Positions 1,783 through 55,993 of a stretch of 64,000 bases of DNA are shown here, piece after piece. The DNA is taken from positions 117,614,001 to 117,678,000 of the forward strand of contig NC_043001.1 of assembly GCF_006345805.1 (NCBI RefSeq), in the 5' to 3' direction. The stretch comes from Octopus sinensis. Its lineage: Eukaryota. Each line of letters begins with the position of its first letter. Position 1 is the first letter of the stretch. The notes beneath the pieces were generated by a model. The model searched no databases. It saw only the letters and a program-made list of their open reading frames with translations, and had not been told where the DNA came from. The translations under genes and the position numbers were made by a program.

Positions 1783-2891
1783 TCGATTGGGGTACCCAAA
1801 AGAAACCGGAAGTTTGCTACTTAGCTTCATATGTTCACACATTTACCGCCTCCAAAGTATTCTCCATTTGAAGGAATGCATCGGTCCAGACGCGTTTTCC
1901 ACTGTCCGAAGCAGTCCTGGAACTCTTGCGAAATGATACCTTTCAATGATTCCGCCGTATTTTTCCTCACCTCTTCCACATGTGCAAAACGTTTTCTTTT
2001 AAAGACTTTTTTTCATTCGGAACAACAAAAAAGTCGCTGGGAGCAAGATTGGGTGAATAGGGAGGGTGGGGGTGGGTAAACGGGGTCATGCCATTTTTGG
2101 TCAAAAACTGTCTCACACTCGTATTGTCATGATGAAACCACCACTCTTCACTTTGCCACAGGTCGAGGAATTTTCGTCTGACCACGTGTAGCAAACGCTT
2201 CAGAACTGCCAAGTAAAATGTCCGGTTAACAGTTTGATCAGGAGGAACACAATCTGTGCGGAAAATTCCTTTCGCAACGATGAAACAAATTAGTATTGTC
2301 TTAACATTGGACTTCACTTGACGCGCTTGTTCCGTTTTTTTTTTGGTGGGGAGCGTGGTGACATTGAATACTTCCGTTGATTTGATTGCTGCTTCGTTTC
2401 CAGGTCGTAGCCGCAGCACCAGCTTTTATCACCAGTGATAATGACCTTCGAAAAAACGTCCGGATCAACTTCCAACTGTTCTTTCAGTTCACGACACGCA
2501 TTCAGCCGTGACTGCTTTTGATCTTCCATAAGCAAGCGAGGCACGAATTTTTGCTGCATCTCTTTTCGTTCGCAATTCGTCGCTCAAAATCCGTTGGGAT
2601 GAGTTCCAGGTCACACCAGATATATCAATAAGTTTGCCAATTATTCGGCGACAATCCTCCAAGATCAGTTCCCGATTTTTCGCGATATTTTCATTCATTC
2701 GGGAGGTCAACGGTCGCTCTGAACGAGGCTGGTCTTCAAGCAACAAGTGACCATTCCTAAAGCGTGAAAACCCTTTGTAAACATGTTTTGCTCATGACAG
2801 CGTCCATGTAAGCTATTTGAAGCATGACAACTGTTTCGGTCGCCGTTTTCCCCAGTAGAAAACAGAATTTCACGGAGGCACGCTGTTCCGC
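1783..2891 (-). pseudogene. Mariner (DD34D-type) transposase relic, frameshifted
   Basis: Successive minus-strand ORF pieces: EQRASVKFCFLLGKTATET (N-terminal HTH), EDQPRSERP, KFVPRLL, ITGDKSW, HHDN, PYSPNLAPSDFF. TIR-like GGGGTACCCAAAAGAAACCGGAA near 1790. The 5' end is cut by (TA)n at 2892. Confidence 0.92.
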
Positions 2892-3113
2892 ATATATATA
2901 TATATATATATAACAATGATAAATATCAAAGTGAGTTATATACAGTAGCGGTAACACATCGTGACGTATTTTTGCCATTTCAATATGGCTAACCCCTAAG
3001 GGTGGATGCTACTGTAGTTTTTAGCCCCAGGAGGACACACTCCTCCAGCTGGCCATAGACACACTATCTGTGTCCTGTCAGTATTTGCAAAGGGAAGTCA
3101 TCCTTCCCGTCTT

Positions 3114-3183
3114 CAACTTATGATACACACGGACTCGAGTTTCGAGGTATTGACCTCTCGTCAGCGTGTGACAATCATAGTTG
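3114..3183 (-). ncRNA. Type I hammerhead ribozyme (family 1, copy 1)
   Basis: Reverse complement of the HHR at 3851-3920; predicted cleavage GUC between 3132 and 3131. Confidence 0.92.
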
Positions 3184-3465
3184 TCGCCGAGAATTAGATT
3201 TCCTTCACAAATACTTATACATTTTCCAGCGCCCACTGTCGCTGATATTGAAAAAGTGAAATCAAACAATGATAAATATCAAAGTGAGTTATATACAGTA
3301 GCGGTAACACATCGTGACGTATTTTTGCCATTTCAATATGGCTAACCCCTAAGGGTGGATGCTACTGTAGTTTTTAGCCCCAGGAGGACACACTCCTCCA
3401 GCTGCCATAGACACACTATCTGTGTCCTGTCAGTATTTGCAAAGGGAAGTCATCCTTCCCGTCTT

Positions 3466-3535
3466 CAACTTATGATACACACGGACTCGAGTTTCGAGGT
3501 ATTGACCTCTCGTCAGCGTGTGACAATCATAGTTG
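3466..3535 (-). ncRNA. Type I hammerhead ribozyme (family 1, copy 2)
   Basis: Identical motif; predicted cleavage between 3484 and 3483. The core lies in the 78-bp spacer of the palindrome. Confidence 0.92.
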
Positions 3536-3850
3536 TCGCCGAGAATTAGATTTCCTATCATAAGTTGAAGACGGGAAGGATGACTTCCCTTTGCAAATAC
3601 TGACAGGACACAGATAGTGTGTCTATGGCCAGCTGGAGGAGTGTGTCCTCCTGGGGCTAAAAACTACAGTAGCATCCACCCTTAGGGGTTAGCCATATTG
3701 AAATGGCAAAAATACGTCACGATGTGTTACCGCTACTGTATATAACTCACTTTGATATTTATCATTGTTTGATTTCACTTTTTCAATATCAGCGACAGTG
3801 GGCGCTGGAAAATGTATAAGTATTTGTGAAGGAAATCTAATTCTCGGCGA

Positions 3851-3920
3851 CAACTATGATTGTCACACGCTGACGAGAGGTCAATACCTCGAAACTCGAG
3901 TCCGTGTGTATCATAAGTTG
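3851..3920 (+). ncRNA. Type I hammerhead ribozyme (family 1, copy 3)
   Basis: Stem I CACACG(3864-69)/CGUGUG(3903-08), with distal CAACUAUGAU/AUCAUAAGUUG across a UGU/U internal loop. Core CUGACGA (3870-76). Stem II GAGG-UCAAUA-CCUC. GAAA. Stem III AC-UCGA-GU with palindromic loop. GUC cleavage after 3902. Confidence 0.95.
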
Positions 3921-4203
3921 AAGACGGGAAGGATGACTTCCCTTTGCAAATACTGACAGGACACAGATAGTGTGCCTATGGCCAGCTGGAAGAGTGTGTC
4001 CTCCTGGGGCTAAAAACTACAGTAGCATCCACCCTTAGGGGTTAGCCATATTGAAATGGCAAAAATACGTCACGATGTGTTACCGCTACTGTATATAACT
4101 CACTTTGATATTTATCATTGTTTGATTTCACTTTTTCAATATCAGCGACAGTGGGCGCTGGAAAATGTATAAGTATTTGTGAAGGAAATCTAATTCTCGG
4201 CGA

Positions 4204-4273
4204 CAACTATGATTGTCACACGCTGACGAGAGGTCAATACCTCGAAACTCGAGTCCGTGTGTATCATAAGTTG
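4204..4273 (+). ncRNA. Type I hammerhead ribozyme (family 1, copy 4)
   Basis: Identical to 3851-3920 shifted by 353 bp; cleavage after 4255. Confidence 0.95.
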
Positions 4274-4426
4274 AAGACGGGAAGGATGACTTCCCTTTGC
4301 AAAAACTGACAGGACACAGATAGTGTGTCTATGGCCAGCTGGAGGAGTGTGTCCTCCTGGGGCTAAAAACTACAGTAGCATCCACCCTTAGGGGTTAGCC
4401 ATATTGAAATGGCAAAAATACGTCAC

Positions 4427-4463
<37 letters not shown>

Positions 4464-4466
<3 letters not shown>

Positions 4467-4522: not shown

Positions 4523-4900
4523 TTAATTAATTTTATGTATTGGCTTATGTTTTTCATTGTTTGATTTGCCTAATAGTGGTTTTATCTCTAATTTAATATA
4601 ATATATATATATAATATATATAATATATATATTTGTTGAAATGGAAAGATGAATTATCTTGTTACGGATCGGGCTCTTAAGGAGCGTCGTCGTTCGAATT
4701 GCTTTGCTGCGCCTCTGTTTTGTTTTGTTCTGACAACGTAATTCCTGGTTTTTCCTTAAGAGAAAGCTGCAATATGGTATCCTTATTTAATCAGAATTTG
4801 GAAAATTGTGGCCTTTGAACATGTGTAGAATGTAATAAAAGGAATTCTGTACAATCTTCGTTCAACTCCCTTTCTTCCATTCATTATTTATATATATATA

Positions 4901-7350: not shown

Positions 7351-8092
7351 ACATATAGTTAAATATATGTACAGTCGTAGAGCGACCAATTGGTTCACAT
7401 GCATAAAGTTCTTAGCTCTATAGACGATTCATCAAACTTCAATTGCCACGGCCATATGACCTATATTCAATTTCGAGACAGGAAACCGTTACGATCAGTT
7501 AATTTGTAAACAAAAGAATATTGAATATTTTTAGATCGATCCAGTCTGCAAAATCTTATGGTCCTAATCGACGAACGAGAAATCCTATGCCTGTAGCCGG
7601 CAATGCTTAAAATGCGGACTGGGGCTATAGATTTCGTGTCTGGAATTCAAGAGAATCCTCAGGTCAAGCGAGTCTTTGAGGATCCTTGCCCGCTCTGCTG
7701 TGCAAAGCTTGCGTCGTCTGCTTCCGTTCATATAGGCCCCGGTTGCTCTATGAACCTTCTTTTAATTTCGCATGGTGTTCCTCATCCTTAAGGCGTCATA
7801 AGTGGTTAACCAGGGACGTGAGGGAATCCTAAAAGAGGACCTATGGTTGCCGCTTAAAGGCAGTTTCGGCCGAAGTGATGTATTTTGAGTGCTGGTTATG
7901 TTGTTTCTGCCGTTCACCCCGGGTCTGAAACTGTTTTTGCCCCTGTCTTTTGCAACAGTTCCTACCTCCAGGCTGAAGAGAGGTTATATACTCGCGGCCA
8001 TTGGAGCCAGACCAGTCGTGTATAGAGCGAAGCGCATTTTGGATGCGAAACTATTGGTCACTCTATGACCGTTCAAATATTTAACTTTATGT
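7351..8092 (-). mobile_element. Penelope-like element relic: GIY-YIG endonuclease C-terminal fragment between inverted pLTR-like repeats
   Basis: Minus-strand translation across frameshifts: KYITSAETAFKR, GNHRSSFR, HRATGAYMNGSRRRKLCTAERARIL...LLNSRHEIYSPSPHFK, resembling PLE GIY-YIG (YIG.T...FK.R..NH.SSF; C.LC..EK..I; LLN.R.E..S.C.H). Diverged inverted repeats at 7351-7425 and 8015-8092 each hold a degenerate HHR-like motif. Confidence 0.78.
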
Positions 8093-12583: not shown

Positions 12584-12819
12584 TAATTACTAACAGAGGC
12601 TCAAAGCCAGAAATTTCAGGGTGGGATGTCGACTAAATCAACTCCAGTATTTCACTGAAATTCATTTTATCAATCTCAGAATTTCAAAAGGAAAATACTG
12701 ACTTCAGCACGATTTGAACCCCGTAAGTTAAGATCGGAATTATAAGGTCAGTCATTTTGACCGACTCTCTCACTCTTCTGAAACACTTAGCTTAGAGACA
12801 AACGTGAATTGGCAGCAAT

Positions 12820-13059
12820 ATGACAGAGCCGTCAAAGCATCTGGTTGAATGTACTGCAGTATTTGTAAGGCGGCGAGCTGGCAGAAACGTTAGCACGCTT
12901 AGCGGTATTTCGTCTGGCGTTACGTTCTGAGTTCAAATTATGACAGAGCCGTCAAAGCATCTGGTTGAATGTACTGCAGTATTTGTAAGGCGGCGAGCTG
13001 GCAGAAACGTTAGCATGCTTAGCGGTATTTCGTCTGGCGTTACGTTCTGAGTTCAAATT
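12820..13059 (+). repeat. 120-bp direct tandem duplication spanning a SINE 5' junction
   Basis: ATGACAGAGCCGTCAAAG...GAGTTCAAATT at 12820 and 12940; one mismatch (CAC/CAT). Confidence 0.93.
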
Positions 13060-22117: not shown

Positions 22118-24150
22118 CTCTCTCCTCCTCACCACCACCACCTCTTTCTCCTCCTCTCTCATCTCCTCTCTCTCTCTATCTCTCCTCTCATCTCTTCTAT
22201 CTCCTCACCACAACCACCTCTTTTTCTCCCTCCTCTATCCTCTCTCTCTCTCATCTCTCATCCTATCCTCTCCTCTATCTCTCTCTCCTCACACCACCAC
22301 ATTTTCTCCCTCTCTCATATCCCCTCTCTTCTCTCTCTCTTCTCTCCTCTCCTCTCTCTCTCTCTCTCCTCACCACCACCAACCTCTTTCTCCCTCCTCT
22401 CATCTCCTCTCTTCTCTATCTCTCTCACACCTCCTATCCTCTATCTATTCTCTCATACTCAACACAACCACCTCTTTCTCCCTCCTCTCATCTCCTCTCT
22501 CTCTCTCTTCTCCCTCCTCTCCTCCTCTCTCTCTCTCACCACAACCACCTCTTTCTCCCTCCTCTCATCTCCTCTCTCTCTCTCTCTCTCCCTCCTCTCC
22601 TCTCTCTTCCTCTCCTCACCACCACCACCTCTTTCTCCCTCTCTCATCTCCTCTCTTCTCTCTCTCTCTCTCCTCTCCTCTCTCTCTCTCTCTCCTCAAC
22701 CACCACCACCTTTTTCTCCCTCCTCTCATCTCCTCTCCTCTCTCTCTCTCTCCCCCCTCCTTCTCTCTCTTCTCTCTCTCCTCACCACAACCACCTCTTT
22801 CTCCCTCCTCTCATCTCCTCTCTCTCTCTCTCTCTCCTCTCCTCTCCTCTCTCTCTTCTCCTCACCAAACACCCATCTTTCTCCCTCCTCTCCATCTCTC
22901 ACTCCTCTCTCTCTCTCTCTCTCCCTCCTCTCTCTCCTCTCTCTCTCTCTCCTCCACCACAACCACCTCTTCTCCCTCCTCTCCTTCATCTCCTCTCTCT
23001 CTCTCTCTCCCTCTCCTCTCCTCTCTCTCTCTCTCCTCACCACCACCACCTCTTTCTCCCTCCTCTCATCTCTCCTCTCTCTCCTCTCTCTCCCTCTCCT
23101 CTCCTCTCTCTCTCTTCTCTCCTCTCCTCTCCTCTCTCTCTCTCTCTCCTCACCACAACCACCTCCTCTTTCTCCCTCCTCTCATCTCCTCTCTCTCTCT
23201 CTCTCCCCCTCTCCCTCCTCTCTCTCTCTCTCTCACCACACACCACTCTTTCTCCCTCCTCTCATCTCCTCTCTCTCCTCTCTCTCTCCCTCTCTCTCCT
23301 CTCTCTCTCTCTCCTCACAACCACCACTCTTTCTCCCTCCTCTCATCTCCTCTCTCTCTCTCTCTCTCCTCTCCTCTCCTCTCTCTCTCTCTCCTCACCA
23401 CAACCACCTCTTTCTCCCTCCTCTCATCTCCTCTCTCTCTCTCTCTCTCTCCTCTCCTCTCTCTCTCTCTCCTCACCACCACCACCTCTTTCTCCCTCCT
23501 CTCATCTCCTCTCTCTCTCTCTCTCTCCCTCCTCCTCTCTCTCTCTCTCCTCACCACCACCACCTCTTTCTCCCTCCTCTCATCTCCTCTCTCTCTCTCT
23601 CTCCCTCTCTCTCCTCTCTCTCTATCTCACCACCACCCACCTATTTCTCCCCTCCTCTCATCTCCTCTCTCTCTCTCTCTCCCTCTCCTCTCCTCTCTCT
23701 CTCTCTCCTCACCACAACCACCTCTTTCTCCCTCCTCTCATCTCCTCTCTCTCTCTCTCTCTCCCTCTCCTCTCCTCTCTCTCTCTCTCCTCACCACAAC
23801 CACCTCTTTCTCCCTCCTCTCATCTCCTCTTCTCTCTCTCTCTCCCTCTCCTCTCCTCTCTCTCTCTCCCTCCTCTCTCTCTCTCTCCTCACCACCACCA
23901 CCTCTTTCTCCCTCCTCTCATCTCCTCTCTCTCCTCTCTCCCTCTCCTCTCCTCTCTCTCTCTCTTCTTCTCACCACAACCACCTCTTCTCCTCCTTCAT
24001 CTCCTCTCTCTCTCTTCCTCTCCCTCTCATCTCCTCTCCTCTCTCCTCACCACCACCACCTCTTTCTCCCTCCTCTCCTCTCTCTCTCTCTCTCCTCCTC
24101 ACCACCACCTTTTTCTCCCTCCTCTCCTCTCTCTCTCTCTCTCTCTCTCT
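22118..24150 (+). repeat. About 2-kb pure-pyrimidine-strand minisatellite (unit about 55-75 bp: CTCACCAC(A/C)ACCACCTCTTTCTCCCTCCTCTCATCTC(CT)n)
   Basis: The anchor ACCACCTCTTTCTCCCTCCTCTCATCTC recurs roughly 30 times between variable (CT)n; essentially no G on the plus strand. Confidence 0.95.
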
Positions 24151-24359
24151 CATCGCCACACCCACATATTTTTACTCTTCTTCATCACTATTTCACTCTT
24201 TTTATTTCTTTTCTCTTTCTCTCAATTTCGTTCATCCTTTTTCATTCTTTTTCATTCATTCTCCTCATCTTCTTTCTTCCTTTTCTTTCGCTATCCCCGT
24301 TTTTTATTATTTATTTTACTAATATTACCTTCTCTCTTACCTTCTATCTTCATTCCACC

Positions 24360-27843: not shown

Positions 27844-28335
27844 TACGCGCGCGCACGCACGCACACACACATACAATTACAATGAGTTACATACAGTACC
27901 TTTACAAAATTTACAGTACACAAAGAAGATATAGTAAAGAAAAGGGAACCGCATGCGAACATACTTAGAGCATCGGCAGGTACCACATTCAGTTAAGAGA
28001 AGAAAAAAACAACAATAATAATAATGTGCAAACAACACGTTAAAACCGCGATAGATTATGTCAGTCCTGCCCTCTAGTTTCTCCACGATATAATACACGG
28101 AACACAAACCAGCGTACAACGCGCCACCACATACTGTACGTTCATATCGCGAAGGTACACATAGTGTACCTTCACATCGAAGCAAAATTGCTAAACATTA
28201 AGAGCCACTTGGATGTGTGAGGGTCAGTTTGTTGCCGCATTAAGCTTTAAGCTTACACTATCATTTCCACCGTATGAAAAGCCACATTCAAACACCACCA
28301 CCTATATTTGCTAAACCTCGCTAAGATAAATATTT

Positions 28336-45090: not shown

Positions 45091-45485
45091 CTAGCAGTAT
45101 CGCCCGGCGTTGCTCGGGTTTGTAAGGGAAATAACTATATAAGCATTTTTAGAGATGTAAAGTATAATAGCCATCTCAATATGGCTAACCACAAAGGGGG
45201 GGGTGTTACTGTAGCGTTTTACGTTATGAGATTTAATAATAAATTTTTAGAGAGTTACTTCCCTTATATATGCCAAAAATGCATTAAAAATGGGAAAAAT
45301 TGATGGTAATTTTTTTTTTAAATCGTTGACTCATCGTAGACGCGCGCTAATACCCAGAAGGGCTCGATATGAATCACGACTATAAGATACCCGGTTTTGG
45401 TTAAACTGCACCGCAAAATGTGGAAGTAGTTAGGAATCTAAATCGTAGGAGACAGACAGCACACAACCTCACTTTTATATATAAA
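45091..45485 (-). mobile_element. Non-autonomous Helitron, copy 3 (98-bp extra internal segment)
   Basis: CTAGCAGTATCGCCCGGCGTTGCTCGGG at 45091 within (TA)n; extra segment 45156-45253. Confidence 0.88.
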
Positions 45486-45990
45486 CTAGCAGTATCGCTC
45501 GGCGTTGCTCGGGTTTGTAAGGGAAATAACTATATAAGCATTTTTAGAGAGTTACTTCCCTTATAGATGCCAATTCGGGCTTTCTTAGCCATTTCTGTTT
45601 TGGTGTCTTCAAGCCATGAAGTCGTTGTTCTAAAAGAACGCTGGTCTCCTTGACAACGCTTTACGACGTTGATTTCCTTACACTCCCTTCCCCACAGCTT
45701 CACGAGGGAGGGAAGAAGGGGGAGAAGCAAACAGGTGCAGGTGTGACCATGGACACCAACTCCGCCGCCATCGACACACGAAAAATTATGCATTAAAATG
45801 GAAAAAAAAATGATGTTAAATTATTTTTAAAATCGTAGACTCATCGTAGGCGCGCGCTAATATACAGACGGGCTCGATATGAATCACGACTATAAGATAC
45901 CCGAATTTGGTTAAACTGCACCGCAAAATATGGGAGTAGTTAGGAATCTAAATCGAAGGGGACAGACACTCACACAACTACAGTTTTATA
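45486..45990 (-). mobile_element. Non-autonomous Helitron, copy 4, head-to-tail with copy 3 (about 210-bp extra internal segment)
   Basis: A second CTAG end at 45486 directly abuts the 5' end of copy 3; unrelated GC-richer insert at about 45574-45780. Confidence 0.85.
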
Positions 45991-46004
45991 TATATATATA
46001 TATA

Positions 46005-46143
46005 TATATGTTTGACAGCGGCCATGCTGGAACATTGCCTTTAGTCGAATATTTCGACCCCAGGACTTATTCTTTGTAAGCCTAGTACTTATTCTATCGA
46101 TGTCTTTTGCCGAACCGCCAGGTTACGGGGACGTAAACACACC
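46005..46143 (-). mobile_element. SINE family A tail, truncated by the family 2 retrozyme
   Basis: GCGGCCATGCTGG...CGACCCCAGGACTTATTCTTTGTAAGCCTAGTACTTATTC...CGTAAACACACC. Confidence 0.85.
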
Positions 46144-46219
46144 ATCATCAACGTCACCAGAAGGGCTGACGCCATCACGGCGTCCTCTAGCCTGCAAAGG
46201 GAGATCATTCCCCGAAGAA

Positions 46220-46285
46220 GCGGATGCCACATACGGATCCAGGTTTCAAGGTGTTTGCCTCTCGTCAACGTATGGCAGGCACCGC
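46220..46285 (-). ncRNA. Type I hammerhead ribozyme variant (family 2, inverted copy; AUC triplet)
   Basis: As 46561-46626, but G16.2 is changed to A (GAAAC-CUGG-AUC); probably impaired. Confidence 0.7.
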
Positions 46286-46560
46286 CCCTCGACGAACGAC
46301 TCTCTGTGCAGGCTATCTATATAAAAATTGGTGACGTTGATGATCGCCTGGGGCTAAATGCATCAGTAACACCCCCACCGCCCTGCCCTGTCCCTAGCCA
46401 TATTCGGATGGCTAACGTCCCTTATGTTATGGAGCAGTTACTGTATATACCTCGTTTAGAGAATTATTATTGCTGTCGAACAGATTTTCTACATCAGTAA
46501 ATGTATTTACTGTGAAAATCTTTATATAGATAGCCTGCACAGAGAGTCGTTCGTCGAGAG

Positions 46561-46626
46561 GCGGTGCCTGCCATACGTTGACGAGAGGCAAACACCTTGA
46601 AACCTGGGTCCGTATGTGGCATCCGC
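46561..46626 (+). ncRNA. Type I hammerhead ribozyme variant (family 2)
   Basis: Stem I CAUACG/CGUAUG, with distal GCGG-UGCC/GGCA-U-CCGC across a UGC/U loop; core UUGACGA (C3 to U); stem II GAGG-CAAACA-CCUU; GAAAC-CUGG-GUC; cleavage after 46610. Confidence 0.82.
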
Positions 46627-46830
46627 TTCTTCGGGGAATGATCTCCCTTTGCAGGCTTGAGGACGCCGTGATGGCGTCAGCCCTTCTGGTGACGTTGATG
46701 ATCGCCTGGGGCTAAATGCATCAGTAACACCCCCACCGCCCTGCCCTGTCCCTAGCCATATTCGGATGGCTAACGTCCCTTATGTTATGGAGCAGTTACT
46801 GTATATACCTCGTTTAGAGAATTATTATTG

Positions 46831-46887
<57 letters not shown>

Positions 46888-47119
46888 ATATATTAGGACT
46901 CAGGTGAACAACGTAGGTCGTGGTATCACTATATATGCACTTGCCGTGGATTTTTGAAAATCTTTGATAATTTAAAAAATTGTTTAATGTTTTTAAATAT
47001 TTTTAGATGTTCCTAATACTGTGGTTCGTGTACTCGTCTGTAGAAAACGGTTTTTATAACGATATCAATTTAAAATTTTTTTGGAAACATGTAATGAATT
47101 GACACCTTTCCGGGTGTGT

Positions 47120-47299
47120 AGTAAGAAGCTTGCCTTGTGCCATAATATGAAACCAAGAAGCTTGCTTCCCAACCACATGGTTCGAGTTTCAGTCTCATTG
47201 CGTGGTACCTTGAGTAAGTATCTTCTACTATAGCCTCGGGCCGACCAAAGCTTTGTGAGTGGATTCGGTAGAGGGAAACTAAAAGATGCCCGTCGTATG

Positions 47300-48181: not shown

Positions 48182-49124
48182 TCATCATCATCATTGTTCG
48201 ACCGTGGTCGAGACAATGGAATTTACTATGTTACGCCAGACTTCACGGTCCATCATAGCATTACAGAGGTCCTGTTGCTGGATGCCTGTATCCCTGGAGA
48301 TTACATCTGGATAGGAGAGTGTGCGCCCTCTGGTATTGCGAGTAGATGGCTTCCAGAGGAGAAGAGTAGAAATTACTTCTTTTTCAGCTCTACAACAATG
48401 TCCAGCAAACTGGACTCTCCTACCTTTCACAAGAGATGACACAGGTGGTAGTTTCCCATATATTTGCATTTTGGTTAGATGGCGCTTCCACGAGAGGTTT
48501 TGAGTTCTCATAAGGAGGCGAGTGTAGGTTCCATCCAACCGCCTCTCAAGCTTCTTTGATAACGTCCAGGTTTCTGAGCCATATAGTAGAATTGGTCTGA
48601 CTGTGGCTTTGAATATTTCAAGTTTGAAGTCTCTACTTAGATTTGATGACCAGATCTTATGCATGTCATTACAGGCTGACCAGGCCATACCCTTTCTAGT
48701 TAGAAAGTCTTTTCCAGATGATGATATGTATGACCCAAGATATTTGTAATCAGAAACCATATTTAAGGGCGCATTGTTGAGAGTATGGATGATGCAATCA
48801 CTGTTGGACAGGCACTTGTTTATGTATTCAGTTTTGGCCTCATTGAGGTAAAGACCTACACAATTTGAGGCTTGTTCAAGAGATTGTAAAAGAGCATGGG
48901 CAGTGGAGAGAGAATCACTGATAAGAGCGATGTCGTCAGCAAAGTCAGTGTCTGTCAAGTACTCAGCTGGGTGTCTGGAACTTCTTCTTGGTTTTATTTC
49001 AAAGCCCTTGCCTGAGATGGTATCAACTGACATACGTAGCACATAATCAACAACAATGATGAAAAGAAATGGGGCGAGTGTGTCTCCCTGCAGTATTCCG
49101 GCTTTGATTGAGAAAGATGATGTG
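48182..49124 (-). mobile_element. 5'-truncated RTE-clade LINE, uninterrupted RT C-terminal ORF (about 310 codons), 10-bp TSD
   Basis: GILQGDTLAPFLF, DFADDIAL, YKYLGS, LLYGSETWT, FAGHC, MMDREVWR; (GAT)n tail after the stop at 48191; CATGCATGCA at 48172-81 and 49125-34. Confidence 0.95.
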
Positions 49125-49177
49125 CATGCATGCACATCCACATCCACATGTATATATACATACGTACTCTCGTATAT

Positions 49178-49223
<46 letters not shown>

Positions 49224-49229
49224 TATATA

Positions 49230-49470
49230 CATATATATATAACTGTGTGTGTGTGTATTTGTGTGTCAGTGACTGTGTTTGTCCCTCCACAATCGCTTGA
49301 CAACCGATGTTGGTATGTTACGTCCCCGTAAAATAGCGCTTCGGCAAAAGAGAACGATAGCATAAGTGCCAGGCTTACAAAAAATAAGTTCAGGGGTCGA
49401 TTTCTTTGACTAAAATTCGGTGCTCTAGCACGCCGCAGTCAAATGACTGAAATAAGTGAAAGAATAAAAG
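49230..49470 (+). mobile_element. SINE family A tail
   Basis: CGCTTGACAACCGATGTTGG...CGGCAAAAGAGAACGATAG...GCAGTCAAATGACTGAAATAAG. Confidence 0.85.
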
Positions 49471-49577: not shown

Positions 49578-50440
49578 GAATGTATCTTTTGCACTTTTAT
49601 CGCCTTCAAAGTATTCTCCATTTGAAGCAATGCATCGGTCCAGACAGGAGGCGGGGTTGCGGGGTCATGCTATTTTTGGTCAATAACTGTCTCACACTCA
49701 AAGCAGTGCGCAGGCGCGTTGTCATGATGAAACCACCATTCTTCACTTTGTCACATGTTGTGGCGTTTTCGTCTCACTGCGTGTAGCAAACGCTTCAGAA
49801 GTGCCAAGTAAAACGCCTGGTTAACAGCTTGACCAGGAGAAACAAATTCTGTGTGGACAATTCCTTCCGTATCTATGAAACAAACCAGCATCTTTTTGAC
49901 ATTGGACTTCGCTTGACGGTTTTTTAGGAGTCGTGGTGATATTGAATGCTTCCATTGATTTGATTGCTGCTTCGTTTCTGAGATCGTAGCCGTAAACCAG
50001 CTTTCGTCATCAGTGATGACCTTCGAAAAAAGGTCCGATTCAACTGTTCTTTCGATTCACGTCACGCATTTAGCCGAAACTACTTTTCATATTCCGTGAG
50101 AAACTGAAGCACAAATTTTGCTGCAACTCTTTTCATTCGCAATTCGTCGCCCAAATTTCATTAGCTGGAGCTCCAGAACACACCAGTTATATCAACAAGT
50201 TCATCAAATGGTCGGCGATGATCCTCCAAGGTCAGTTCCCGAATTTTCCCGATGTTTTCATCCGTTCGGGAGATCGACAATCACCCTGAACGCGGTTGAT
50301 CTTCAAACAACAAAGCGTAAACCACTCGTAAATTTGTGTTTTGCTCATGGCAGTGTCCTTGTAAGCCATATGAAGCATGACAAGTTTTGGTCGCCGTTTT
50401 CCCCAGCAGAAAACAGAATTTCAGGAAAGTACGGTGTTTC
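49578..50440 (-). pseudogene. Mariner transposase relic, same family as 1783-2891
   Basis: Collinear with the first copy (TCGCCTTCAAAGTATTCTCCATTTGAAG...CATGATGAAACCACC...GTCGCCGTTTTCCCCAG.AGAAAACAGAATTTC); LKFCFLLGKTAT and EDQPRSG motifs; internal deletion. Confidence 0.88.
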
Positions 50441-50814
50441 TTCGTTTCAACCATCGCAAAAATCGATGAACATGGAAGAAGCACTGCAAAACAACTTCAC
50501 TCGAGGACGCCGGTCGGTAGATTAAAGGATTAGAAAAAAATCAGAGACAAAGAAAAAGGTACAGAGGAAATAAACGAGTTGGAAATAGTGGGAGTTAAAG
50601 AAAGAGAGGGCCAAGAAATGTGAAAGAGGGGGAGCGAGAAAAGGAAGAAGAATGAGAGGGGGAATAAAAGATAGAGTAAGAGTCGTACAAAATTTAGATA
50701 CATACCTACTATAAGGTGAACACAAGGGTGTACGTACGCCGCTACATATATATATAATTGGAACAAAAACGCAATAGAGGACATTAAAACATTCGGACAG
50801 ATAGACGATACATA

Positions 50815-52364: not shown

Positions 52365-52494
52365 CATCTGTGTGGCAGGAAGCTTGCTTCCCAATCACAT
52401 GCTTCCGGGTTCAGTCCCACTGCGTGGCACCTCGGACAAGTGTCTTCTACTATATCCTCGGACTGAGAAAAGCCTCGTCAGCGGAATTGATAGA
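52365..52494 (+). mobile_element. SINE family A head, fused to the broken 3' end of the Tx1 element
   Basis: GTGTGGCAGGAAGCTTGCTTCCCAATCACATGCTTCCGGGTTCAGTCCCACTGCGTGGCACCTCGGACAAG. Confidence 0.85.
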
Positions 52495-55400
52495 AACTAC
52501 CTTTCCCTCCCGGCCAAAAGAAGATGGCGGAGTGAGCCTCCCAATGGACTCGGCTGATATCCGGATCCGTCCTACACATGATAACAGCTGTTCGACAAAG
52601 CTCCACAGGTCAGTAATGCATGGACGCTGGACGGGTGCATGCAGGACGGTTTCATCTACCTGCGCACGGCTCAGACAGGTCCGTCTGACAGCACTTCCGT
52701 GTTTGTAGAGTTTGTCTCGAACCGGCAGAGCTCCCCGATAGCACTGCCAGGTCAGGGATTTCTGGAAGTTATCTATATCCTCGCGCCTGAATGTCCTGAA
52801 AAGACCAGTTAGTTTATCCCTCCCGACATCCAGAGTTTCCCCGAGTATGTCATCGCTCTTTCCCTCCACTAATCCGCTAAAGTACTCCATGGTGGAAGTT
52901 CCACCGACCGCGTTGCCAGACTGGCAGAAGGCTGTTAGCGCTTGCCGACACTCCAGGTGCCAAGCTCCCTTTCTTGGTTTACGCTTGACCCAGGACTATA
53001 ACTCCATTAGCAGCGGAAAGTCCCGTTTGACGAACGGTGACTACACGTGCTCACCATTAAGGAAACGCTGGAGATGCCGCAGCCTCAACGCATGTCTGCG
53101 CATCATTAGCCACGGCATGCCCAGTACTCCGCTCAACGGCTGTTGACAGCAGATTGACCGTCTGACAAGAGGAAGAGTCCCTTCCATAGAAAGTGGAAGA
53201 GCAAGCGATCTAAGTTCATCATGCACGAGTGGGGCAAGGGTCGACGATCAGGCGGTAATAGATGATGGAAGCGATGAACGCATTCACCCCTCCGCCCGAC
53301 ACTTCAGGAACAGCTTCCTCTCTGACCATTTCTGGGTGAGATTGGCTACCATGCTCGTCACCTCACCGCAGTTTTTGCCCACCTGGATGTCTGGACCAAA
53401 TCAGACCCCGAGCAATTTAACCGGTCCTTCTGTCCAACACCCTACAACACTGTTGGTTAGTATGGAACTGCCTCTCTAAGTACCGAGTTGTAGGTCCACC
53501 GACTTCTGGTTGATCTTTGCCCCTGTCATCGCTTCGTACTCCCTTAGAACTTTGCCGACCACCAATTTCCTAGATGTCCGTGTAAGCCGATACGAACCCT
53601 CCGCATCTTAGATCACGAGGGATGCCGCTCGAAACATCCAGCTTCCGCAGCAATGGCTCGAGAGCCAGAACGTACAGAAGAGGCGAAAGTGCACATCTCT
53701 GACAGACTGAACGAGCGATGCTAAACAATTCCCATAGGTGGCCATTTACTTTGACCACCGAACAGATGTCGCTGTACATTACAACAATCCGGCCTCTGAA
53801 AGCGAGATCGAAAACCCGCTATCGCGAGAACAGCATCCAAGTATTGGTGGTCGACCCTATCAAAAGCTTTCGATTGATCCAAATTGATCAGGACCCCACC
53901 CATACCAGGCTCTTTACCCACCCTCTTAATGATGTGGAGGTTGTTGTGGATAGTTCTGTTTGGGATAGCGCATGTCTGCGCGTCACCAAGCAACTTATCG
54001 ACGACAAGCAGAAACCTCTTGGCTAACACCTTGGCCGAAATCTTATAATCTGCACTCAGAAGACTTATAGACCTAAAATTATCAATTTTGTCCCCTTCCT
54101 CAACAGCACCATCACTCCACGGCTCACAGCACTGGAAATTCTCCCGTTCTGCTGTCAGTTGTGGTAGACGTCTGCCAAAAGACCACCGAACAAGTCTGGC
54201 ATATGAAAATAAGGCTCGAAGTTCAGACCATCTCGCCCTGGTGACTTCTCTCTCGCGCAGTCCGTCATTGCGTCCCGTATGTTTTCGACTGTTTTAGGCA
54301 TTTCGCAGGACTCCGCATCTCTGGCTGAGAGGCACGGCATCCCACTGAGATACGAAGTGAAATCCACCACCGTCTCAGAACCACTGCGTAATCCATAAAG
54401 TTCGACGAAGTGCCGATGAAATTCTGCACACACCTGCCTGGACTTGGTTATCATGCGCCTATCACAACTCAACAAAGACCAAATTCTTGCTTTGTTTCCA
54501 CGTAGCGCCTCATCCACCCGAACCCATCGAATGTCTTTCGTCCCCTCCTGTCTCAGTGCACGTGTCCTAGCTCTGAAAATGCAACCTTCATGCTTGGCAT
54601 TGAGGAAATGATCATGAGCCAATTTCGCCACTAGCACGTCGGTCGCTACGACTTTTTTGAGCGTCTCTCCTAGCTTCCTAACTAGGTGCCCTCTATCCTA
54701 GATTACTCTAACGCTATTTTCTAATAGCCCTTTTCAGTGCTATCCACCATCCGTTGTTGACGATTGCGCCCGCCAACTCTCGATAGATGGGGCCCCAGAA
54801 GGCGAACCTAAACCGGTCCTTCGGGAAGGAGTCCAACACCCTGAACATATCGACTTCCGATATGACCTCCGTAGTCACCTGTGGAGGCCTAACAGGGTCT
54901 TCAGTCCAAGGCATGGTCTCCTCTCTCCGGCCCTCTAGCTTCCTTAAGAAGCTCTGTATTGCCCCTCCCTTATGGAGGAAGATAACAAAATCATCTCTAG
55001 TCGCTCTGGGAGGGGCCACAGTTTTCTCAGTCGGTGACACACTTCCCACCGACAAAGTTTCAGGGCATGCCGGCAGTGTACAATCAACCACCGGCAATGT
55101 CTCGTTCATTTTCTTTTTTCTTTTTCTCTCCTTTGCTACGGGAGGGTGTGGTACCTCCGCTTTATCCGGAGGATCTTCTTCCCCTCCCGCAGCTTTAGGG
55201 TCGCTCGGCGGGCAATCATTGTTGCCCACCTTCTTTCTTTTCTTTCCTTTTTTCGAGGAGGTCTCCACTTCCTAGTCTGTCTCCATCTCGCTCTCCAATG
55301 GGGAAGCAGGGGCCACTACTTTTATTAACTGCTCCAGGACCTTACCTTGGTTCTGGGGACAGTTCTTTCTATCTACTGGCCTACAAAATACTCTATCTAG

Positions 55401-55993
55401 ATGCGATCTGGAAGACCGGATGCGGTTCACCCATATCAACATTGGCGCATTGGGGAAATCAAATCGGTACCTGTCAGCCAACTGGAAGTGACTGAGCAGG
55501 TTTGTGAGGCTTTTACTCCACCCTCTCCTATTAGCTAGTCCCATCCTATCCAGGCGGGCATCCAAGATGCCATTCCAGTTACCCACTAACATTAAAGAGC
55601 CTGACGTCTCAAGGAAAACATCTAAACGTCTGAAAAAATCTGGGTGCCCCACCCCCGTGGGAGCGTACACATCGATGAGTCTAGAGGGACCACTTTCGCT
55701 GTCACGTCCAGGACTACCAACTTACCCTTCGGGTCCAGGAAGATCGTCCGAATTTCGAGGTCAGTGCCTTTCCTAAACAACACTGCCACCCTCTTCCCAT
55801 TCCGAGCCGACTAAGAGATACGTCGATCTCAAAATCGTCGAAAATGGGTGCAAGATCGCGTGTCGGAAATCCTGGTTTCACTGGCTGCTATCACATCCAA
55901 ACCTAGCGACATGAGGTCATTGAGCGAGCGACCTTGCTTCCAGGGTGACCTCAAGCCGCGAACATTTATGCAGCCCACTCTGACAATTGCCAT
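52495..55993 (-). pseudogene. Tx1/L1-clade LINE ORF2 relic (APE, RT, zinc finger), frameshifted and rearranged
   Basis: ATG at 55993: MAIVRVGCINVRGL..ETR; VYAP, LVGNWNGILD, SHLDRV (APE); KSPGRDG, NFRSISLLSADYKI.AKVLAKR, NLDQSKAFDRVDH, SPLLYVLALEPLL (RT); GALPVRDKL..DETVLH (C-terminus). Confidence 0.92.

What the first reader, a model, noticed from the sequence alone, without database searches (positions are those of the whole stretch)
2912..4426. 353-bp tandem repeat with a complete type I hammerhead ribozyme in every unit: a candidate cephalopod non-LTR retrozyme
Seen in sequence: each unit has all conserved HHR core nucleotides (CUGACGA, GAAA, GUC), a G-C-closed stem II with a UCAAUA loop, a 2-bp stem III capped by the palindrome UCGA, and a long stem I with a UGU/U internal loop. 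There are four intact copies (two per strand) and the units are at least 99% identical. Established knowledge: tandem repeats of a few hundred bp with type I HHRs whose short stem III has a palindromic loop (dimeric cleavage) define Schistosoma SM-alpha, newt satellite-2 and the non-LTR retrozymes of cnidarians, bivalves and amphibians, which give small linear and circular RNAs. Inference: read-through transcription would release a 353-nt monomer (3903-4255; 352 nt on minus, 3483-3132) with 5'-OH and 2',3'-cyclic phosphate ends that could be circularised. I cannot check whether this family is already catalogued.
Basis: partly seen in the sequence, partly recalled or inferred. Interest (0 to 1): 0.93.

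Follow-up and report, generated by a model that had tools for sequence, protein, structure and literature searches.

The report
Hammerhead-ribozyme tandem retroelement in octopod DNA
This is a young, non-coding 353-bp tandem repeat carrying a complete self-cleaving hammerhead ribozyme in each unit, a known kind of mobile element (a "non-LTR retrozyme"), and the shape of its insertion suggests it was copied in by a Penelope-like retrotransposon.

Summary
Window 2912-4426 is two head-to-head arrays of one 353-bp unit, minus strand 2912-3555 and plus strand 3556-4426. They carry four identical, complete type I hammerheads. Rfam RF00163 scores each 32.2 bits, just under its cut-off of 34, so a gathering-threshold scan misses them.

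The unit is non-coding, 43% GC, and predicted to fold tightly (z = -4.3). Helix III is 2 bp with a palindromic loop, which favours cleavage as a dimer. Only 4 singleton differences occur in about 1.5 kb. This matches a non-LTR retrozyme as described in coral, mussel and axolotl.

New points:
- Both outer (3') ends abut a (TA)n microsatellite and the two 5' ends meet with 1 nt of overlap.
- The outer ends lie at unit positions 171 and 220, so one arm carries a 49-nt "tail".
- A second, 55%-identical family at 46144-46832 has the same architecture and ends at the homologous position. It keeps all 22 ribozyme pairs, 6 by compensatory changes, but has a C3-to-U core change.

These are signatures of Penelope-like element integration. 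Cephalopod (octopod-like) origin is supported; the species is not identified. Cleavage, circles and mobility are untested. Verdict: a new member of a known kind.

The parts
2892..2911 (.). Left flanking (TA)n microsatellite, the presumed target
   Evidence: Sequence. Pure TA runs cover only 1.6% of the window.
2912..3555 (-). Minus-strand array, 1.83 units. Its 5' end is at unit position 281/282 (window 3556/3555) and its 3' end at unit position 220 (window 2912).
2912..2960 (-). 49-nt 'tail' (unit positions 172-220), present only at the outer end of the minus-strand arm
   Evidence: Copy alignment. Compare the PLE tail described in PMC8557442 and PMC11167929.
3126..3170 (-). Type I hammerhead ribozyme, cleavage between 3132 and 3131
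   Evidence: RF00163, 32.2 bits, E = 1.1e-5.
3478..3522 (-). Type I hammerhead ribozyme, cleavage between 3484 and 3483
   Evidence: RF00163, 32.2 bits.
3132..3483 (-). The one complete releasable monomer on the minus strand, 352 nt (1-nt deletion at unit position 80)
3555..3556 (.). Head-to-head junction of the two 5' ends; base 3556 is shared by both arms (1-nt microhomology)
3556..4426 (+). Plus-strand array, 2.47 units. Its 5' end is at unit position 7 and its 3' end at unit position 171.
3864..3908 (+). Type I hammerhead ribozyme, cleavage after C3902
   Evidence: RF00163, 32.2 bits.
3903..4255 (+). The one complete releasable monomer on the plus strand, 353 nt, 42.8% GC. Predicted fold -110.5 kcal/mol, z = -4.29.
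4217..4261 (+). Type I hammerhead ribozyme, cleavage after C4255
   Evidence: RF00163, 32.2 bits.
4043..4060 (+). Conserved hairpin TAGCCATATTGAAATGGC (one copy per unit, five in all). It lies 13 nt upstream of the inner 3' end and is shared with two other repeat families in the window.
4427..4464 (.). Right flanking (TA)n microsatellite
46144..46832 (.). Second, related family with a 358-bp unit, 55% identical. An inverted arm (46144-46329, minus strand) is followed by a plus-strand array (46329-46832). The 3' end lies at the position homologous to unit 220 and abuts (TA)n.
46569..46616 (+). Hammerhead of the second family, with C3-to-U and a G10.1-U11.1 pair. A second copy with the same change lies on the minus strand at about 46235-46283.
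   Evidence: Not detected by Rfam at E <= 10.

Best explanation
The locus is a recent insertion of a non-autonomous, non-coding retroelement of the non-LTR retrozyme type. Its 353-nt unit carries one canonical metazoan type I hammerhead.

Proposed working, RNA side (inferred):
- The array is transcribed into oligomeric RNA.
- Helix III is only 2 bp with the palindromic loop UCGA, so two neighbouring hammerheads pair through ACUCGAGU into a double hammerhead.
- Each cuts after GUC. This releases a 353-nt monomer (3903-4255, or 3483-3132 on the other strand) with 5'-OH and 2',3'-cyclic phosphate ends.
- A host RNA ligase can close the monomer into a highly self-paired circle.

Proposed working, DNA side (the part the sequence records):
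- The reverse transcriptase/GIY-YIG endonuclease of a Penelope-like element nicked both strands of a (TA)n microsatellite.
- Each nick primed cDNA synthesis at one of two fixed internal sites of the RNA, unit positions 171 and 220, just downstream of a conserved hairpin.
- Synthesis ran for 2.5 and 1.8 unit lengths along a circular or multimeric template.
- The two cDNAs were joined 5' end to 5' end with 1 nt of microhomology.

Shown by sequence: the anatomy, the unit identity, the ends and the conserved fold. Inferred: transcription, cleavage, circularisation and the identity of the mobilising enzyme.
For: Ribozyme:
- Four full-length RF00163 matches with every core nucleotide. The strict motif occurs 4 times against 0 expected.
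- Against the second family, all 22 base pairs are kept and 6 pairs carry changes on both sides. Slid controls give only 27-50% pairing.
- The dimer fold forms the 8-bp ACUCGAGU helix and is favoured: -55.1 against 2 x -25.2 kcal/mol.

Retrozyme traits:
- 353-bp tandem units at 42.8% GC.
- The longest stop-free frame is 66 aa and has no protein relatives.
- The monomer folds at z = -4.29.
- Mussel retrozyme units are 350-390 bp (PMC7229834).

Recent copying from one template: only 4 singleton differences in about 1.5 kb, and all four ribozymes are identical.

Penelope-like integration signature:
- An inverted, 5'-truncated copy sits next to tandem copies, and a tail is present at one end only. 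Both are described for PLEs in PMC8557442.
- All three canonical 3' ends abut (TA)n. A random boundary does so with P = 0.018.
- The two families end at homologous positions despite 55% identity.
- A purified PLE protein nicks and extends both DNA strands, prefers AT-rich targets, and starts reverse transcription at two internal sites that are not homologous to the target and that define the tail (PMC11167929).
- Vertebrate retrozymes resemble the pseudo-LTRs (pLTRs) of PLEs (bioRxiv 10.64898/2026.07.22.740005).
Against: - No PLE reading frame is in the window, and no PLE from this genome could be compared with the unit.
- The tail is 49 nt, against the 30-40 bp reported for PLEs.
- The architecture rests on two loci. 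The left side of the second locus is not clean: its inverted arm stops at unit position 92 against a SINE fragment.
- No target-site duplication can be read inside a microsatellite.
- The Rfam score is below the curated cut-off.
- There is no expression or cleavage data.
- The second family carries a C3-to-U core change in both arms. Either that ribozyme is weakened and cleavage is not needed for mobility, or that copy came from a defective RNA.
- No further copies were found outside the window, because no cephalopod genome could be searched by DNA.
Confidence: 0.75

Rival explanations
1. It is an ordinary satellite or tandem duplication that happens to contain a hammerhead-like motif. It arose by unequal exchange or replication slippage, and an inverted duplication was added later. 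It is neither mobile nor catalytic.
For: Only 4.3 units are present. No copy was found outside the window. The Rfam score is under the gathering cut-off.
Against: - The motif is complete and is not expected by chance.
- Its fold is preserved by 6 compensatory changes in a 55%-identical second family.
- That second family has the same inverted-plus-tandem layout, the same 3' end position and the same (TA)n contact. This indicates independent insertions.
Confidence: 0.07
2. It is a foldback-type DNA transposon. Long terminal inverted repeats built of tandem subrepeats are moved by a transposase, and the hammerhead is a passenger.
For: The overall shape is two long inverted arms made of tandem subrepeats with no spacer.
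Against: - The outer termini are not inverted copies of each other. One arm ends at unit position 171 and the other at 220.
- The inner breakpoints are also asymmetric, at positions 7 and 281.
- No transposase or fixed terminal motif is present.
- The same asymmetry recurs in the second family.
Confidence: 0.04
3. It is not a separate non-autonomous family. It is a heavily truncated or internally deleted copy of an autonomous Penelope-like element, consisting of pLTR sequence only.
For: PLE pLTRs carry hammerheads and form tandem and inverted arrays. Vertebrate retrozymes are sister to pLTRs.
Against: - The 353-nt unit repeats head to tail 2.5 and 1.8 times with no ORF sequence between the ribozymes. 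A 5'-truncated autonomous copy would not give this.
- PLE hammerheads are usually minimal variants lacking helix III (PMC4209133). This one is the canonical form found in retrozymes.
- The distinction is partly one of wording, since retrozymes are now proposed to derive from PLEs.
Confidence: 0.1
4. The palindrome is an assembly artefact, for example a missed long-read adapter that produces a sequence followed by its reverse complement.
For: There is a near-perfect inverted repeat with no spacer.
Against: The arms break at different unit positions at both the inner and outer ends. The flanks are different unique sequences, a mariner remnant on the left and AT-rich DNA on the right. A second family shows the same kind of structure.
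Confidence: 0.03

Closest known systems
Non-LTR retrozymes of metazoans (Cervera & de la Pena 2020, PMC7229834: Acropora millepora, Mytilus galloprovincialis, Ambystoma mexicanum)
   Same: Tandem units of a few hundred bp (mussel 350-390 bp), each with one type I hammerhead. Low GC, no coding capacity, no LTR/PBS/PPT, and a weak helix III with a palindromic loop. The predicted RNA is highly self-paired.
   Different: The host is an octopod-like cephalopod, for which no paper in the searched library reports retrozymes. The array is very short (4.3 units) and split into two inverted arms. Circular RNA is not shown here. The 2020 review states that no conserved motif pointed to the mobilising element (PMC7761336). 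Here there are fixed 3' ends and a conserved hairpin module.
Penelope-like elements (PLEs) and their pLTR hammerheads (PMC4209133, PMC8557442, PMC11167929)
   Same: Tandem plus inverted 5'-truncated layout, a tail at one end, insertion into AT-rich or (TA)n DNA, and a hammerhead expected to work as a dimer. In vitro a PLE protein primes from both DNA strands and starts reverse transcription at two internal sites.
   Different: There is no RT/GIY-YIG reading frame. The ribozyme is the canonical form with helix III, not the minimal PLE variant. The tail is 49 nt rather than 30-40 bp. Sequence similarity to a PLE pLTR was not testable.
Schistosoma Sm-alpha and newt satellite 2 hammerhead repeats
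   Same: Short tandem or dispersed repeats, each with a type I hammerhead. Dimer-dependent cleavage is classic for the newt repeat (Forster et al. 1988, cited in PMC4209133).
   Different: The unit sequences are unrelated. Those families reach thousands of copies and their transcripts have been shown. Copy number and expression are unknown here.
L1 twin priming inversions
   Same: Two cDNAs are primed from the two strands of one target and joined by microhomology, giving an inverted segment.
   Different: In L1 the second primer anneals internally by chance and the two parts are consecutive pieces of one RNA. Here both arms start at defined internal sites of the same repeat unit, as reported for a PLE enzyme.

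Membership tests
Hammerhead ribozyme type I (Rfam RF00163) | Conserved core C3 U4 G5 A6 N7 G8 A9, G12 A13 A14, the A15.1-U16.1 pair, and H17 at the cleavage site | tested here: met
   CUGACGA, GAA, A..U and GUC are all present in all four copies.
Hammerhead ribozyme type I (Rfam RF00163) | Three helices around the core, with helix I as the open end | tested here: met
   The covariance-model alignment covers model positions 1-45. All 22 pairs are kept in both families, with 6 compensatory changes.
Hammerhead ribozyme type I (Rfam RF00163) | Score at or above Rfam's gathering threshold (34 bits) | tested here: not met
   The score is 32.2 bits with E = 1.1e-5 in the local scan, and there is no hit at gathering threshold. 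The shortfall comes from non-consensus stem II and loop letters, not from the core.
Hammerhead ribozyme type I (Rfam RF00163) | Mg2+-dependent self-cleavage after H17 | not testable with these tools
   Needs in vitro transcription of monomer and dimer templates.
Non-LTR retrozyme | Head-to-tail repeats of about 170-400 bp, each with a type I hammerhead | tested here: met
   Period 353, 2.5 plus 1.8 copies, four ribozymes.
Non-LTR retrozyme | Low GC (below 45-50%), no ORF, no LTR/PBS/PPT | tested here: met
   GC is 42.8%. The longest stop-free frame is 66 aa and finds no homologue. No terminal direct repeats other than the unit itself.
Non-LTR retrozyme | Weak helix III (1-2 bp) with a small palindromic loop, allowing a dimeric active form | tested here: met
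   Two pairs plus loop UCGA. The predicted dimer forms the ACUCGAGU duplex and is 4.7 kcal/mol better than two monomers.
Non-LTR retrozyme | Stable, highly self-paired monomer RNA | tested here: met
   -110.5 kcal/mol, z = -4.29, and 0 of 100 shuffles fold as well. In the circular fold 62% of bases are paired.
Non-LTR retrozyme | Expressed as small linear and circular RNAs | not testable with these tools
   No transcriptome of the host could be searched.
Non-LTR retrozyme | Many dispersed genomic copies; coexistence with autonomous PLEs | tested here: inconclusive
   Two related families lie in one 64-kb window. No copy was found in 94 kb of other fetched loci or in two metagenome scans. No PLE ORF is in the window. 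Octopus vulgaris is reported to have recently active Penelope families (PMC13282606), but the host species is not identified.
Penelope-like element (autonomous) | A single ORF with a telomerase-like RT and a GIY-YIG endonuclease | tested here: not met
   The unit has no ORF. The window's RT domains belong to LINEs. The element is therefore not filed as a PLE, only as probably PLE-mobilised.
Penelope-like element (insertion signature) | Partial tandem plus an adjacent inverted 5'-truncated copy; a tail at one end; microsatellite or AT-rich target | tested here: met
   compared with the descriptions in PMC8557442 and PMC11167929. The tail is 49 nt, against 30-40 bp reported.
Penelope-like element (insertion signature) | Sequence similarity of the unit to the pLTR of an autonomous PLE of the same genome | not testable with these tools
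   No PLE of the host genome was available.

The most novel reading that the evidence does not exclude
The two loci may be natural records of two-strand target-primed reverse transcription of a hammerhead retrozyme RNA by a Penelope-like enzyme. On this reading:
- The roughly 120-nt 3' module is the cis-acting recognition signal that ties animal retrozymes to PLE machinery. It comprises the conserved hairpin TAGCCATATT-NNN-ATGGC and two fixed start sites 49 nt apart, and part of it is shared with a third, ribozyme-less repeat at 45091-45985.
- The second family moved although its ribozyme core carries C3-to-U. This would mean self-cleavage is dispensable for integration in vivo, as it is in vitro for the anole PLE.
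Probability: 0.35. Interest if true: 0.6.

Novelty: new member of a known kind. Interest (0 to 1): 0.4.

Why it matters
Hammerhead retrozymes yield abundant small circular RNAs in corals, mussels and salamanders. How they are copied back into DNA is still argued from co-occurrence and from pLTR similarity in frogs.

This locus adds a cephalopod-type host. It also shows a young, nearly unmutated insertion whose ends can still be read. Both 3' ends lie in a (TA)n tract and fall at two fixed internal positions next to a conserved hairpin, and the 5' ends are joined head to head. That is what the one biochemically studied Penelope-like enzyme does in vitro. The locus therefore gives a concrete, testable cis-element and integration model for animal retrozymes.

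There are two practical lessons. Rfam's gathering threshold misses these ribozymes by 1.8 bits. Read-through across the head-to-head arms would give a long perfect hairpin RNA of about 640 bp.

Tried and rejected
1. Rfam at gathering threshold over the whole window gave no hit. The ribozymes appear only in the E-value scan.
2. I looked for copies elsewhere through proteins. The unit's 63-aa ORF is not on record and its 66-aa frame has no homologue.
3. Two metagenome scans found nothing: one with the stem II-specific hammerhead pattern, one with the hairpin plus TACTGTATATA pattern.
4. Six loci were fetched through LINE homologues, 94 kb in all: ENA ERZ25072740 (two loci), GCA_024449705.1, Argonauta hians (two loci) and Acanthosepion pharaonis. 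None holds fam1, fam2 or an Rfam hammerhead.
5. A regex hammerhead-like string in L001 was not supported by Rfam and was dropped. So was the chance regex match at window 7617-7662.
6. A 21-nt similarity of 4547-4567 to unit positions 206-226 does not exceed shuffled controls, with a score of 32 against a shuffled maximum of 35. It was rejected as a relic.
7. A weak match at 27877-27898 has no related context and was rejected.
8. Identifying the host from the first LINE RT failed, because the hits are unnamed. A second LINE gave cephalopod names.
9. No PLE reading frame was seen among the window's ORFs. A full Pfam scan of all frames was not run.
10. An HDV-like or viroid-like RNA replicon was considered and rejected. 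The ribozyme is in one polarity only, there is no antigen ORF, and the element is integrated as DNA with flanks.
Full report
**1. What is in the sequence**

Region 2912-4426 consists of one 353-bp unit arranged as two arrays in opposite orientation.
- Tandem Repeats Finder reports 3556-4426 with period 353, 2.5 copies and 99% matches.
- The repeat finder shows that 2912-3555 is the reverse complement of the same unit, with arms 97-100% complementary.
- blastn of the monomer 3903-4255 against the window gives these pieces:
  - plus strand: 3556-3902 (unit positions 7-353), 3903-4255 (1-353) and 4256-4426 (1-171);
  - minus strand: 3556-3484 (281-353), 3483-3132 (1-353, with a 1-nt deletion) and 3131-2912 (1-220).
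- An alignment of all pieces shows four differences, each in a single copy:
  - unit position 49, T to A, in the third plus-strand piece;
  - positions 73, T to C, and 89, G to A, in the second plus-strand piece;
  - a 1-nt deletion at position 80 in the full minus-strand unit.
- All four ribozyme copies are identical.

**2. The ribozyme**

A whole-window Rfam scan at gathering threshold finds nothing. A local E-value scan finds four full-length matches to Hammerhead_1 (RF00163), each at 32.2 bits against a gathering score of 34, with E = 1.1e-5. They lie at 3864-3908 and 4217-4261 on the plus strand, and at 3522-3478 and 3170-3126 on the minus strand.

Read in standard numbering, the RNA is CACACG / CUGACGA / GAGG-UCAAUA-CCUC / GAA / AC-UCGA-GU / C (cut) / CGUGUG.
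- All invariant core positions are present.
- Helix II has 4 bp and is closed by G10.1-C11.1.
- Helix III has 2 bp with the palindromic loop UCGA.
- Helix I has 6 bp, then a UGU/U internal loop, then about ten more pairs.

The strict pattern occurs four times against 0.00 expected in 100 shuffles. This is the architecture that Cervera and de la Pena give for canonical metazoan type I hammerheads: helix I of 6 bp, helix II of 4 bp, and helix III of 1-2 bp with a 2-4 nt palindromic loop that is active as a dimer (PMC4209133). ViennaRNA predicts that two copies of the 82-nt ribozyme segment form the intermolecular ACUCGAGU helix. The dimer energy is -55.1 kcal/mol, against -50.4 for two separate monomers.

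**3. The unit as a whole**

- GC is 42.8%, against 38.6% for the window.
- No frame stays open for more than 66 codons across a trimer.
- The longest frame has no relative in the 5.8-billion-protein database.
- The linear monomer folds at -110.5 kcal/mol, z = -4.29 against 100 shuffles. Positions 1-51 pair with about 262-319, so helix I continues into a long helix.
- Only one polarity carries a ribozyme.

**4. A second family in the same window**

blastn and nhmmer with the unit pick up 46144-46832.
- It has a 358-bp unit that is 55% identical to the first family.
- An inverted arm (46144-46329) is followed by 1.4 plus-strand units (46329-46832). One base is again shared at the head-to-head junction.
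- The conserved islands are the ribozyme, CCTGGGGCTAAA, the hairpin TAGCCATATT-NNN-ATGGC, TACTGTATATA and the 3' end TTAT-N-ATTG.
- Its ribozyme reads CAUACG / UUGACGA / GAGG-CAAACA-CCUU / GAA / AC-CUGG-GU / C / CGUAUG. This is a C3-to-U change plus a G-U closing pair of helix II.
- Both arms carry the C3-to-U change, so it was in the copied RNA. Rfam does not detect this ribozyme at E <= 10.
- On the two-sequence alignment, all 22 pairs of the hammerhead and extended helix I are standard pairs in both families. Six pairs differ on both sides and three on one side. Sliding the partners by 1-3 columns gives only 27-50% pairing. The fold has therefore been maintained while the sequence diverged.

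**5. Ends and target**

- The outer (3') end of the minus-strand arm is at unit position 220 (...TTATCATTGTT | ATATAT).
- The outer end of the plus-strand arm is at unit position 171 (...AATACGTCAC | TATTATAT).
- The plus-strand array of the second family ends at ...TTATTATTGC(T) | ATATAT, which aligns with position 220 of the first family to within one base.
- All three ends touch a pure (TA)n run. Such runs cover 1.6% of the window, and a random boundary lies within 3 bp of one with P = 0.018.
- The template bases just beyond each end (GATG..., TGAT...) do not resemble the target.
- The inner (5') ends are at unit positions 7 and 281/282 and share one base.
- A target-site duplication cannot be read inside a microsatellite.

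**6. Reading the architecture**

Craig et al. describe PLE insertions as follows (PMC8557442):
- partial tandems, often with an inverted 5'-truncated copy adjacent to them;
- a 30-40 bp tail at one end;
- a strong bias for microsatellites, (TA)n among them.

Frangieh et al. studied a purified anole PLE protein and found the following (PMC11167929):
- it cleaves and extends both DNA strands and prefers AT-rich DNA;
- the sequence between those two sites corresponds to the tail;
- ribozyme mutants do not affect insertion in vitro.

The locus fits this point by point. The top-strand nick at 2911/2912 primed the cDNA of the minus-strand array. The bottom-strand nick at 4426/4427 primed that of the plus-strand array. 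Synthesis ran 1.83 and 2.47 unit lengths, and the two products were joined through one base. Arrays longer than one unit require either a circular monomer copied round and round or a multimeric transcript, and the data do not decide between these. The C3-to-U family is in line with cleavage not being required for integration, but it is a single insertion.

**7. A shared 3' module**

The hairpin and its upstream flank (CTACAGTA-R-CA-Y-CC...GGTTAGCCATATTGA-R-ATGGC) recur on the minus strand at 45157-45219. There they sit inside a third repeat (45091-45985), which has no hammerhead and also ends at TA runs. The pattern occurs 9 times in the window against 0.17 expected. I propose it as the recognition element for the mobilising enzyme. 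This is an inference.

**8. Host**

- The window is rich in microsatellites, SINEs, LINE fragments and mariner remnants.
- A first LINE RT gave only unnamed hits.
- A pseudo-protein joined from the LINE at 52453-54697 has its best named relatives in Argonauta hians (58% and 42% identity) and Acanthosepion pharaonis (37%).
- The SINE at 47100-47295 matches an Argonauta hians genomic locus twice, at 75-78% identity.
- An octopod-like cephalopod is therefore supported, but the species is not identified.
- Octopus vulgaris is reported to hold 31 recently active Penelope-like families (PMC13282606).

**9. Known or new**

Non-LTR retrozymes are established in cnidarians, molluscs (mussel units of 350-390 bp), amphibians and many other phyla (PMC7229834). 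A 2026 preprint derives them from PLEs, based on co-occurrence and on pLTR similarity in Xenopus. In the searchable library, no paper joins retrozymes or hammerheads with cephalopods, other than a PLE survey that mentions cephalopod Naiads. Whether Dfam or Repbase hold this unit could not be checked.

The finding is a new member of a known kind. The added value is the readable integration signature and the candidate cis-module. A 2020 review stated that no conserved motif pointing to the mobiliser was known (PMC7761336).

**10. Limits**

No cephalopod genome or transcriptome could be searched by nucleotide sequence. Copy number, the distribution of ends, expression, cleavage and circularity are all untested. 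The PLE link rests on two loci and on published enzyme behaviour.

Noticed in passing
window 46144-46832: A second hammerhead repeat family with a 358-bp unit, 55% identical to the first. It has the same inverted-plus-tandem layout and the same 3' end position at a (TA)n run. Its ribozyme core carries C3-to-U in both arms.
   Followed up: yes
window 45091-45985: A third repeat, flanked and interrupted by TA runs, with no hammerhead. One of its two copies carries a 97-bp insert (45155-45252, bounded by the duplicated ATTTTTAGAGA) that contains the hairpin module shared with the two ribozyme families.
   Followed up: partly
window 46014-46143: A SINE-like fragment lies between the left (TA)n run and the inverted arm of the second family, and that arm stops at unit position 92 instead of the usual end. 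Possible causes are a deletion, a nested insertion or a template switch. This is unresolved.
   Followed up: partly
window 47100-47295; L004 3989-4086 and 6357-6428: A tRNA-derived-looking SINE of the window has copies of 75-78% identity in an Argonauta hians genomic locus. This is useful as a marker of the host lineage.
   Followed up: partly
window 2912-4426: Read-through transcription across the head-to-head junction would give a near-perfect hairpin RNA with arms of about 640 bp. Such an RNA is a likely substrate for RNA interference or A-to-I editing.
   Followed up: no
window 1967-2890 and 49754-50496: Mariner-type transposase remnants on the minus strand. The first is cut off at its 5' side by the TA run and the ribozyme element.
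   Followed up: partly
window 48194-49438 and 52453-55721: Two LINE remnants on the minus strand with RVT_1 and zf-RVT domains. The second is broken by frameshifts into ORFs of 82-190 aa.
   Followed up: partly
window 12819-13059: An exact 120-bp tandem duplication (99% matches) inside a SINE-like sequence.
   Followed up: no
window 22142-24151: A degenerate (CT)n tract about 2 kb long.
   Followed up: no
window 3126-4261 (the four ribozymes): Rfam's gathering threshold for RF00163 (34 bits) is missed by 1.8 bits even though the core is complete. Standard annotation pipelines would not label these ribozymes.
   Followed up: yes
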